A stretch of DNA of 53,050 bases, counting the filler, from Dendrobates tinctorius (Eukaryota), in assembly GCF_039654945.1 (NCBI RefSeq). It is 6 parts of 6 records of this genome, joined end to end, with 100 filler letters (N's around TTAATTAATTAA, not from the genome) between each part and the next. Parts side by side here need not be neighbours in the genome. Positions count along the whole stretch, not along the records: positions 12,806 to 23,425 come from NW_027361798.1; 5 more parts are not named here. One strand, written 5' to 3'. Position numbers and translations under genes: made by a program. How positions within the stretch are numbered: the first letter of the stretch is position 1; every line of letters starts with the position of its first letter. The notes under the pieces are model-generated. The model was not told the origin of the DNA, did not search any database, and worked only from the letters and a program-made list of their open reading frames with translations. This document shows positions 14,207 to 15,655 of this stretch, piece by piece.

Positions 14207-15655
14207 TGTGACGGACAGCGGACCCTGTGCCACCAATATGTCACGATCCCACCACCGACACGGGTTTGTCAGCGGACGGAGGGATGTGACGCACTGCCGG
14301 CACACGGCTATCACAGGCACAGTGGGGGCTTATCTTAGTTATCCCACCACTGGCACCATGTGACAAAAATATACAGCAAGCTAACCTTTCTCTAACAATT
14401 TACCGCAGGGGGGTATTTTGGTTGCCCCACCACTGCTAACAACCTTCCAAGAACTGTGGGGATTTATGTATATCCCACTTTCTCAGTTCCACTTTGGAAC
14501 TCGCAGCTCTCCGGCGCCCCCCTTACCCTCAGGTCAGTAAGGGAACTGCACCTAGGATAATTAGTCGCCGGATGGGCTGCTTGTTGTGCACGGGCAGTTA
14601 GACTACTGCAGTAAGGGAATTATCAATGCTTTGGCCACAGCCACTCATCCAGCATGTAAGACCCTGCCATCCTGCCAACTAGCCCAACCAACCGAACACA
14701 CCACGCTGCCACCAGCCACAATTCACTTAATCAAAGAGTTAATTAAGAGGGTCCGTGGCAAACCCCCAAATTAGTAGCGATTATCTAATAAAGGCACATA
14801 GTTCGTTTCTTAGAGCATGAAGACAGACTGATAATTTTATCACATTCCCAAAAGGTGGGCAGCAATTACATAGATAAAGTTGTTGCAAAGTTGAGACATT
14901 AAATATGTACATTGCAAATATAAAGTAACGGGTGAAAGCAGAAAGTACACTTACATGTGCTTAACTGGTATTAGGCAAACCATGTGTGGCAAGGGGGATG
15001 GGCCGCTTAGCCAGACGTCCCCGGACATCTGCAGGTCTTTTCAGCATCAAAACTCCAGCTTCAACTGAAGAATTGTAAGGGAGGGGTATCTTATAGCCTA
15101 GGGTCGGTTACATCACGAAAGGGGCAGTCTGGAGAAGTTCATCCCCCCTTTCTCCAAGTTGCAGTTTCACTGTAAAACTAATAATTATATCTTAACGCGG
15201 GAAGCTCGTATAAACACACCAATGGTCTAGTTTTTCTCAATTTATCGAATCCAATAAGACAACACCAAGCATGCCGCAATTAGGATTTGGGAGCAATCCA
15301 TATCTCAGTTTCTGGAGGGGTTAGAACCATGAAAATTAGGGGTTAGAAAGCTGGTTTTGTTGCCTACGCAGAGATGTGATTATCATATCTCTGCGGTGTA
15401 TGTTTTTTGCGATATGACTTGTTTTAATACATCCCATAGCTGAATTCAAGCCCCTGGTTTTAAACAAAGACATGCTCTCCACTCAGCTTAAATAACATTC
15501 TTAGCTACAATAGGAAATGGACAGTGTCCTGTTACCAAATGCAGGCAGAGGGGGGAGGTAAGGGGGAATGCTGCAGCTATGTGACAAGGAGATTTTCTCC
15601 TAGAATGGAGGATTCTGGAAGGTTCCAACAAAATCATGCCTTACAGTACATTACG
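14207..15655 (-). repeat. 3' LTR (~1.45 kb)
   Basis: Begins (C/T)GTAATG right after the polypurine tract AAAAGGGGGAGG (15656-15667, minus) and ends TCACA. Positions 14207-14842 align with 20849-21476. Confidence 0.82.

What the first reader, a model, noticed from the sequence alone, without database searches (positions are those of the whole stretch)
14207..14720. LTR containing several tRNA-Leu PBS-like sites, two placed after pseudo LTR ends
Seen: besides the real PBS (20828-20845), both LTRs contain PBS-like words. On the + strand of the 3' LTR these are TGCCACCA-ATA-TGTCAC (~14228), ATCCCACCACCG (~14246), ATCCCACCACTGGCACCA-TGTGACA (14341), GCCCCACCACTGCTAACA (~14424), ATCCCAC (~14472) and CACGCTGCCACCA (~14702). 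Two of them reproduce the full LTR-end plus PBS junction. Known: a PBS normally occurs once, outside the LTR, and 3' tRNA fragments repress LTR elements through the PBS. Inference: either the LTR grew stepwise by absorbing old PBS junctions (a fossil record of LTR extension), or the copies serve as alternative priming sites or decoys for tRNA-Leu 3' fragments. I do not know of a description of this arrangement.
Basis: partly seen in the sequence, partly recalled or inferred. Interest (0 to 1): 0.72.

Follow-up and report, generated by a model that had tools for sequence, protein, structure and literature searches.

The report
Old primer sites buried inside LTR
A decayed Gmr1-like gypsy retrotransposon carries inside each long terminal repeat several leftover copies of its own "LTR end plus tRNA-Leu primer site" junction, one nearly intact, which suggests the repeat grew as that junction was duplicated and priming moved downstream.

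Summary
All six words sit at the stated places, occur in both LTRs, lie only on the element's sense strand, and are far more frequent than in shuffles.

The element lies on the minus strand. It is not an ERV. It is a broken Gmr1-like Ty3/gypsy retrotransposon, with integrase ahead of reverse transcriptase.

The true PBS (20828-20845) matches the tRNA-Leu(AAG) 3' end 17/18 here and 18/18 in the family majority.

The PBS-like words are not isolated motifs. Their flanks are homologous too:
- Site A (14341-14365 / 20982-21006) is a pseudo LTR terminus TGTCACA abutting an 18-mer that matches tRNA-Leu(UAG) 17/18.
- Sites C and D also show terminus, 3-nt spacer, then a PBS-like word.
- Site D shares 14 exact bases with the real junction, 31 nt away.

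Best reading (about 0.6): these are duplicated junction modules carried into U5 once priming used a downstream copy, with a switch between tRNA-Leu isoacceptors. A role as decoy or alternative primer site is untested.

Two related Gmr1-like elements lack the pattern, so it is specific to this family. No other copies of the family could be fetched, so the order of events is inferred. Interest is moderate.

The parts
14207..14842 (-). 3' LTR (636 nt; sense strand starts TGATAAAA and ends CGTCACA)
   Evidence: Direct repeat with 20849-21476. MAFFT alignment of both ends. 94.9% identity, K2P 0.053.
20849..21476 (-). 5' LTR (628 nt; ends CATCACA)
   Evidence: The last 14 nt differ from the 3' LTR at 5 positions.
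20828..20848 (-). Spacer TAT (20846-20848) and the real PBS (20828-20845), sense TGGTGGCAGCAGTGGGAT
   Evidence: 17/18 to the published tRNA-Leu(AAG) 3'-end probe. The family majority has C at 20835, which gives 18/18.
14341..14365 (-). Site A in the 3' LTR: pseudo terminus TGTCACA (14359-14365) abutting the PBS-like TGGTGCCAGTGGTGGGAT (14341-14358)
   Evidence: 17/18 to tRNA-Leu(UAG) and 16/18 to Leu(AAG). The 15 nt upstream match the real U5 end 12/15. Duplex energy -30.9 kcal/mol.
20982..21006 (-). Site A in the 5' LTR, 151 nt upstream of the LTR end
   Evidence: No majority difference is listed here in four runs.
14246..14272 (-). Site C in the 3' LTR: CTGACA + AAC + CCGTGTCGGTGGTGGGAT
   Evidence: Composite module. 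14/18 to Leu(UAG). 15/16 identical to site A.
20887..20913 (-). Site C in the 5' LTR
   Evidence: The family majority has T at 20897 and A at 20899.
14218..14244 (-). Site D in the 3' LTR: GTGACA + TAT + TGGTGGCA, then a decayed remainder
   Evidence: 14 nt exact (ACATATTGGTGGCA) with the real junction.
20859..20885 (-). Site D in the 5' LTR, 31 nt upstream of the real junction
   Evidence: Best self-alignment of the LTR plus leader: score 35, against a shuffle maximum of 30.
14424..14441 (-). Site B in the 3' LTR (5' LTR copy: 21063-21080): TGTTAGCAGTGGTGGGGC, with no pseudo terminus
   Evidence: 14/18 to Leu(UAG). Homology to site A runs about 30 nt further (score 23). The units align beyond the words at only P 0.04.
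14697..14714 (-). Site E, about 128 nt from the LTR's 5' end, presumably U3 (5' LTR copy: 21332-21349): TGGTGGCAGCG plus a decayed remainder, with no pseudo terminus
   Evidence: 11 exact bases of the Leu(AAG)-type PBS in the 3' LTR and in the family majority. Duplex energy -25.3 (5' LTR) and -26.7 (3' LTR).
14466..14479 (-). AGTGGGATATACAT (5' LTR copy: 21105-21118), which resembles the PBS 3' end plus the first leader bases
   Evidence: Scores 18-20, borderline on their own.
20810..20827 (-). First leader bases after the PBS. In this copy they continue the period-31 alignment as a third, decayed unit.
   Evidence: Alignment score 34. It is weakened in the family majority at 20826/20827.
15676..20154 (-). 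Broken gag-pol. gag-like 19846-20154; possible protease ORF 18619-19443; integrase 18504-16951; RT 16979-16146; RNase H 16149-15676.
   Evidence: Pfam hits. ORF list with stops and frameshifts. Homology to the gag and PR-IN ORFs of L002.

Best explanation
The PBS-like words are leftover copies of the element's own junction module: the last bases of U5 (...T[G/C]ACA), a 0-3 nt spacer, and an 18-nt tRNA-Leu primer-binding site.

Inferred mechanism:
1. The module was duplicated locally several times. Misaligned template switching during reverse transcription, or unequal exchange, are the likely causes.
2. When the primer tRNA annealed to a downstream copy, minus-strand strong-stop DNA began there. 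It therefore carried the upstream copies as part of U5.
3. The two strand transfers then placed those copies in both LTRs, and the LTR grew.
4. Only duplications that carried a CA terminus for integrase together with a PBS would give a transposable product. That would explain why the copies come as pseudo LTR end plus PBS.
5. Upstream copies then decayed.

Site A keeps 17/18 bases of a tRNA-Leu(UAG)-type site, while the working PBS is tRNA-Leu(AAG)-type. The boundary shift therefore went with a switch between isoacceptors.

Shown: the modules, their flank homology, their excess over chance, and their presence in both LTRs and in many family copies.
Inferred: the duplication mechanism, the order of events, and that the upstream copies once served as primer sites.
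For: - Sites A, C and D have a terminus-like word and spacer in the right register: 3 per LTR against 0.27 expected, P 0.002.
- Site A shares 12/15 upstream U5-end bases with the real junction, as well as the PBS.
- Site D shares 14 exact bases (ACA-TAT-TGGTGGCA) exactly 31 nt upstream of the real junction. This is the best self-alignment, score 35, beyond all 150 shuffles.
- There are 8 internal alignments scoring 20 or more, against 1.2 expected. All involve the junction.
- Site A is 17/18 to a published tRNA-Leu(UAG) 3'-end probe. The family-majority PBS is 18/18 to the Leu(AAG) probe.
- All sites lie on the sense strand. None at 13/18 or better lies in the 6-kb interior.
- The modules are in both LTRs. 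Contigs from three organism labels span D, C and A, one of them without gaps (record 12).
- The last ~30 nt of U5 has a dip in summed contig depth in three of four runs, and it differs between this element's two LTRs. That fits a junction that turns over.
- An intact relative, L002, appears to have a short U5 (by-eye reading).
Against: - No family copy with a shorter LTR ending at site A, C or D was seen. Only one read-laying run was allowed and its tables are truncated.
- TRF finds no tandem repeat.
- The B and A units align beyond the words at only P 0.04.
- In the family majority, three bases (20826, 20827, 20859) weaken the downstream part of the 31-nt alignment. The secure core of D is 14 nt.
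- Sites B and E and the 14472 word lack a pseudo terminus. Site E lies near the LTR's 5' end, in what is presumably U3, which growth at the U5 end does not explain.
- The U3/R/U5 borders were not mapped.
- The tRNA sequences used are human ones from a paper, not the host's.
Confidence: 0.6

Rival explanations
1. The copies are kept because they work. They could be extra landing sites for tRNA-Leu (alternative priming at site A, giving short-LTR progeny, or primer recruitment into particles), or decoys that soak up 3' tRNA-Leu fragments that would otherwise block the real PBS. Origin by duplication is compatible with this.
For: Predicted duplexes with the 18-nt tRNA-Leu 3' end are strong: A -30.9, B and C -25.5, E -25.3 kcal/mol, against -33.1 for this copy's real PBS and a mean best of -19.5 in shuffles. 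Site A is still 17/18 to a real tRNA and shows no majority difference in four runs. Repression through PBS-derived sites by 3' tRFs is documented (PMC12853362).
Against: There is no evidence of selection: 2 differences in 72 nt of words between the LTRs, against 4.6 expected, which is not significant. C, D and B have lost pairing to the tRNA's CCA end or its middle. The homologous flanks are explained by duplication alone. Two related elements manage without such sites. An LTR that contains site A cannot have been primed at A in its last cycle.
Confidence: 0.15
2. One rearrangement rather than stepwise growth. A fragment of another copy (U5 end, PBS and some leader) entered the U5 of a master element by nested insertion or recombination between co-packaged RNAs, and was then reshuffled by small duplications.
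For: The two LTRs of this element carry different U5 ends, and there is no target-site duplication, so recombination happens in this family. Four X15 contigs show the 3'-LTR-type end followed by a different PBS-like word, TGGCGACAG (table 7). The A-to-C-to-D spacings are irregular (53-95 nt).
Against: The stretch after site A shows no significant homology to the present leader or to the LTR start; the best score is 21, within the shuffle range. Three modules in the same orientation and register need more than one event anyway.
Confidence: 0.15
3. The words are ordinary LTR-internal repeats, such as reiterated regulatory motifs around GGTGGGAT, or composition effects of a G/T-rich strand. Their likeness to the PBS would be incidental.
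For: The PBS itself is a G-rich, triplet-like word. LTRs often carry short repeats. The weaker sites (B, the 14472 word) are individually within reach of chance.
Against: Dinucleotide shuffles, block shuffles and shuffled queries all reject it. The 17/18 match to a tRNA 3' end and the homologous terminus and spacer flanks are not expected of a transcription-factor motif. Nothing comparable occurs on the antisense strand, in the interior, or in relatives L001 and L002.
Confidence: 0.07

Closest known systems
Gmr1-like clade of Ty3/gypsy LTR retrotransposons
   Same: LTRs with TG...CA ends. Gypsy-type integrase (H2C2 zinc finger, rve, SH3), RT and RNase H. Integrase upstream of RT, which is the hallmark of the clade (PMC8220671). 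The gag is homologous to that of an intact relative whose gag has a weak SCAN hit.
   Different: The two relatives fetched (L002 intact; L001 from Bufo gargarizans, also with a tRNA-Leu-like PBS) have no PBS-like words in their LTRs. L002's U5 looks much shorter (by eye). This copy is broken and lacks a target-site duplication.
Ty3 bipartite primer-binding site (5' PBS plus a segment in U3)
   Same: A gypsy-group element with primer-complementary sequence inside the LTR region, including U3 (PMC5371799). Site E lies near the LTR's 5' end, presumably U3.
   Different: In Ty3 the U3 segment pairs with other parts of the same tRNA (the T and D arms). Here every site is complementary to the same 3'-terminal bases, so the sites compete rather than cooperate on one tRNA.
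Retroviral vectors engineered with two primer-binding sites (dual initiation; from my own knowledge, not retrieved here) and the LTR1 lentiviral vector with a relocated PBS (PMC5542766, seen only as a search hit)
   Same: Priming at a downstream PBS carries the upstream PBS into the copied terminal region. The position of the PBS defines what becomes LTR.
   Different: Those are laboratory constructs. Here the arrangement is natural, multiple, partly decayed and present in a very abundant family.
PBS-derived targets of 3' tRNA fragments
   Same: 18-nt complements of a tRNA 3' end in retrotransposon transcripts. tRNA-Leu is used by ERVL (PMC12853362).
   Different: The known targets are the single PBS downstream of the LTR, or its relics in host transcripts. 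They are not arrays inside the LTR. The isoacceptor differs too: Leu-TAA for ERVL, Leu-AAG/UAG type here.

Membership tests
Ty3/gypsy, Gmr1-like clade | pol domain order protease-integrase-RT-RNase H (integrase upstream of RT) | tested here: met
   On the minus strand, Integrase_H2C2 lies at 18504-17998, rve at 17939-17547, SH3 at 17550-16951, RVT_1 at 16979-16146 and RT_RNaseH at 16149-15676. One ORF runs from the integrase C-terminus into the RT lead-in and aligns to the end of L002's PR-IN ORF.
Ty3/gypsy, Gmr1-like clade | RT/RNase H/integrase grouping with Gmr1 reference elements in a tree | not tested
   No Gmr1 reference sequence was on hand. The nearest database proteins are 60-68% identical RNase H fragments, the best named one from Bufo gargarizans.
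Ty3/gypsy, Gmr1-like clade | Flanking LTRs with TG...CA ends and a target-site duplication | tested here: inconclusive
   TG...CA ends are present. No duplication is present: the flanks read GTAAA and CCAAG. With the divergent last 14 nt, the two LTRs may not stem from one insertion.
ERV-L-like endogenous retrovirus (suggested by a tRNA-Leu PBS) | Retroviral pol order protease-RT-integrase | tested here: not met
   Integrase precedes RT, and the domains are gypsy-type (RT_RNaseH, Integrase_H2C2). No env-sized ORF lies between RNase H and the 3' LTR.
Canonical primer-binding site | About 18 nt complementary to a tRNA 3' end, 0-5 nt downstream of the 5' LTR | tested here: met
   For 20828-20845: 17/18 to Leu(AAG), 18/18 in the family majority, 3 nt after the LTR. 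Site A meets the complementarity (17/18 to Leu(UAG)) but not the position. It lies 151 nt inside the LTR, next to a pseudo terminus.
Ty3-type bipartite PBS | The LTR/U3 segment pairs with a different part of the same primer tRNA than the 5' PBS does | tested here: not met
   Site E repeats the first 11 bases of the PBS itself, so it matches the tRNA's 3' end, not its T or D arm.
Tandem repeat array | Head-to-tail copies detectable by a tandem-repeat finder | tested here: not met
   TRF at minimum score 30 finds nothing in either LTR. The period-31 relation appears only in a gapped self-alignment.
tRNA gene or tRNA-derived SINE inside the LTR | tRNA-like fold or a match to an RNA family | tested here: not met
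   ARAGORN finds no tRNA. Rfam gives no match at E up to 1.

The most novel reading that the evidence does not exclude
Site A is still a working second primer site for tRNA-Leu(UAG). The family would then make progeny with two LTR lengths, depending on which tRNA-Leu isoacceptor primes. More broadly, the array of tRNA-Leu sites in the LTR transcript would be maintained to recruit primer tRNA or to absorb inhibitory 3' tRNA-Leu fragments.
Probability: 0.15. Interest if true: 0.7.

Novelty: new variant of a known kind. Interest (0 to 1): 0.45.

Why it matters
The LTR/internal boundary of a retroelement is set only by where the primer tRNA binds and where integrase cuts. This family appears to preserve a series of earlier boundaries inside its U5. 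That would be direct sequence evidence that LTRs can lengthen by duplication of the terminus-plus-PBS module, and that a family can move between tRNA isoacceptors while doing so.

I found no description of this arrangement in three text searches.

The family is extremely abundant: 19,072 contigs laid in one run. A census in the source genome could therefore order the steps.

If the sites also bind tRNA-Leu or its fragments in vivo, they bear on how elements escape tRF-based repression. As it stands, this is a modest evolutionary curiosity in a dead copy.

Tried and rejected
- Fetching other family copies failed. Exact-word scans of viral and metagenome contigs found nothing.
- A protein word search with the integrase-C/RT-N ORF found nothing at 1e-10.
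- The RNase H search gave at best 68% identity, so only other families could be fetched, not this one (L001, L002).
- Those two relatives served as negative controls and show no PBS-like excess.
- TRF finds no tandem array.
- Rfam and ARAGORN find no tRNA-like or known RNA element.
- A fused double LTR (LTR-PBS-LTR) was considered. The stretch after site A resembles LTR positions 30-58 only at score 21, within the shuffle range. Rejected for lack of support.
- A Ty3-like bipartite PBS was rejected, because site E matches the same tRNA bases as the PBS.
- Depth differences along the LTR in the possible RNA run X15 were not interpreted. The tool warns that contig depth cannot rank parts of a stretch.
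- Rare deletion joints at 20999>21090/91 and 20885>21091 end at PBS-like words, but rest on 21-24 nt sides in 1-2 contigs. Too weak to use.
- Dating from LTR divergence (K2P 0.053) was not pursued. The two LTRs may not come from one insertion.

Full report
**What is there**

The piece 12806-23425 holds one LTR element on the minus strand. The LTRs are 14207-14842 and 20849-21476. On the sense strand they start TGATAAAA and end CGTCACA (3' LTR) or CATCACA (5' LTR). They are 94.9% identical, K2P 0.053.

Three bases (TAT) after the 5' LTR comes the PBS at 20828-20845, sense TGGTGGCAGCAGTGGGAT.

The start at 14207 is right.

There is no target-site duplication. The last 14 nt of the two LTRs differ at 5 positions, so the two LTRs may not come from one insertion.

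Different satellites flank the element: 32-bp units at 12806-13600 and 43-bp units at 21548-23096.

**What kind of element**

Pfam places the domains in this order on the minus strand:
- Integrase_H2C2: 18504-17998
- rve: 17939-17547
- integrase SH3: 17550-16951
- RVT_1: 16979-16146
- RT_RNaseH: 16149-15676

Integrase therefore precedes RT. One ORF (16951-17550) runs from the integrase C-terminus into the RT lead-in. It aligns (E 8e-36) to the end of the 848-residue protease-integrase ORF of an intact relative, L002. The gag-like ORF matches L002's gag (E 4e-20).

Gypsy-type domains with integrase upstream of RT define the Gmr1 clade (PMC8220671). The element is therefore a Gmr1-like Ty3/gypsy retrotransposon, not an ERV.

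It is broken by stops and frameshifts.

**The primer**

A paper's Northern probes give the complements of human tRNA-Leu 3' ends (PMC6103689):
- Leu(AAG): TGGTGGCAGCGGTGGGAT...
- Leu(UAG): TGGTGGCAGTGGTGGGAT...

This copy's PBS is 17/18 to Leu(AAG). Contigs of four public runs show that most family copies have C at 20835, which makes it 18/18. The tRNA-Leu assignment is sound. It assumes the host's tRNAs match the human ones, and the host is not identified.

**The observation**

All six words are at the stated coordinates and recur in the 5' LTR.

Against 5000 dinucleotide shuffles of the LTR:
- the best match (15/18) has P about 0.0008;
- there are 5 sites at 12/18 or better, against 0.36 expected;
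- the antisense strand has none.

Further controls:
- Shuffling the query gives P below 1/3000.
- The 5985-nt interior has no sense-strand site at 13/18 or better.
- Predicted duplexes with the 18-nt tRNA-Leu 3' end are -30.9 (A), -25.5 (B, C) and -25.3 kcal/mol (E). This copy's PBS gives -33.1, and the mean best in shuffles is -19.5.

**What the words are**

They are parts of longer repeats of the U5-end/PBS junction.

*Site D.* The sense sequence is GTGACA-TAT-TGGTGGCA.... It shares 14 exact bases with the real junction (ATCACA-TAT-TGGTGGCA...) and lies exactly 31 nt upstream of it. In this copy the alignment extends over about 42 nt, through TTTTCAT and into the leader. Its score of 35 is beyond all 150 shuffles, whose maximum is 30.

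*Site A.* TGTCACA directly abuts TGGTGCCAGTGGTGGGAT. The 18-mer is 17/18 to Leu(UAG). The 15 bases upstream (TGCATTTTTGTCACA) match the real U5 end (TGCGTTTTCATCACA) at 12/15.

*Site C.* It reads CTGACA-AAC-CCGTG[C/T]CGGTGGTGGGAT and is 15/16 identical to site A over its core.

*Composite test.* 'ACA + 0-3 nt + PBS-like' modules number three per LTR, against 0.27 expected (P 0.002; 0.004 with block shuffles that keep local composition).

*Shared base.* Sites A, B and C share the T at PBS position 10 that marks the Leu(UAG) type. The working PBS and site E have the C of Leu(AAG).

*Overall.* There are 8 internal alignments scoring 20 or more, against 1.2 expected, and all involve the junction.

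**Weaker points**

- Sites B and E and the 14472 word have no pseudo terminus.
- Homology of the B and A units beyond the words is only P 0.04.
- TRF sees no tandem repeat.
- In the family majority, 20826, 20827 and 20859 differ from this copy in a way that weakens the TTTTCAT part of the D alignment. The secure core of D is the 14-mer.
- Site E lies about 128 nt from the LTR's 5' end. Growth at the U5 end does not explain it.
- I could not map U3/R/U5. A reading with CATAAA at sense 370 as the poly(A) signal would put B, A, C and D all in a U5 of about 230 nt. U5 looks like about 55 nt in L002, but that is only a reading by eye.

**Family evidence**

The family is very abundant. In run X1, 19,072 contigs were laid on 951 bases, and it occurs under three organism labels.

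One contig of organism C spans 20849-21007, across D, C and A, without gaps (record 12). The architecture is therefore not private to this copy.

The bin holding the last ~30 nt of U5 has lower summed depth than its neighbours in three of four runs (X1, X5, X15). I do not lean on this, because the tool warns about contig depth.

Four X15 contigs carry the 3'-LTR-type end followed by ATT-TGGCGACAG, possibly another PBS (table 7).

Two other Gmr1-like elements show no excess of PBS-like words: L002, which is intact (the stretches compared are identical; TSD TAAAG), and L001 from Bufo gargarizans, whose PBS is tRNA-Leu-like. The pattern therefore belongs to this family, and the test is not trivially positive.

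No copies of the family itself could be fetched.

**Mechanism**

Best reading, about 0.6: the module [U5 terminus + spacer + PBS] was duplicated several times, and priming at a downstream copy carried the upstream copies into minus-strand strong-stop DNA. From there they reached both LTRs.

Only duplications that include both a CA terminus and a PBS yield a product that can integrate. This explains the paired pseudo ends.

The older copies are Leu(UAG)-type and the current one is Leu(AAG)-type, so the primer changed along the way.

An LTR that contains site A cannot have been primed at A in its last cycle, because priming at A would have left A outside the LTR.

Rivals:
- Retained function as an alternative primer site or tRF decoy: 0.15. 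It is untested, and there is no sign of selection (2 differences in 72 nt, against 4.6 expected).
- A single recombination or nested-insertion event: 0.15.
- Incidental LTR repeats or composition: 0.07. The shuffles and the flank homology reject this for A, C, D and E.

**Comparison with what is known**

- The Ty3 bipartite PBS also puts primer-complementary sequence in U3. There it pairs with other arms of the same tRNA (PMC5371799).
- Engineered two-PBS vectors show the principle that the PBS position defines the LTR content (my own knowledge; PMC5542766 seen only as a search hit).
- 3' tRFs act on PBS-derived sites (PMC12853362).
- Three text searches found no description of PBS relics arrayed inside an LTR.

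**Verdict**

The fossil-junction reading is supported but not proven. The function reading remains open. This is a new variant of a known kind, of moderate interest.

Noticed in passing
window 12806-13600: Satellite of 32-bp units with a 16-bp sub-period, about 24 copies, running off the piece's left edge.
   Followed up: no
window 21477-23096: A 43-bp satellite (36 copies, with a 170-bp higher-order period) starts 70 nt from the 5' LTR. The 70-nt stretch and the satellite are themselves extremely abundant in all four runs. About 250 contigs in X1 carry that stretch without the LTR beside it.
   Followed up: partly
window 23166-23305: Two tandem copies of a 69-bp unit, 85-86% identical.
   Followed up: no
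window 18883-19004 and 19058-19087: Inside the 274-residue ORF upstream of integrase: a 54-bp unit repeated 2.2 times and a (TCA)10 run coding an acidic stretch. This ORF has no Pfam hit.
   Followed up: no
window 14207-14222 versus 20849-20862: The last 14 nt of U5 differ at 5 positions between the two LTRs, against 5% elsewhere. With the missing target-site duplication, this points to a recombinant element or to LTRs from two insertions.
   Followed up: partly
window 20863 (run X15, loose ends): Four contigs carry the 3'-LTR-type U5 end followed by ATT-TGGCGACAG. This may be a subfamily with a PBS for another tRNA. Nine bases are too few to name it.
   Followed up: no
L002 4890-11463: An apparently intact, young Gmr1-like element in an ENA contig. 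LTRs 4890-5270 and 11083-11463 (the stretches compared are identical), TSD TAAAG, PBS TGGTGACAGCGAGAAGGGAT, an 848-residue protease-integrase ORF ahead of RT.
   Followed up: partly
L001 9448-15000 (Bufo gargarizans CM026468): A 5-kb Gmr1-like remnant. Its 507-nt LTRs have a 9-nt perfect terminal inverted repeat (TGTAGCGGA...TCCGCTACA) and a decayed tRNA-Leu-type PBS, TGGTTGGCAGCGCTGGGAT.
   Followed up: partly
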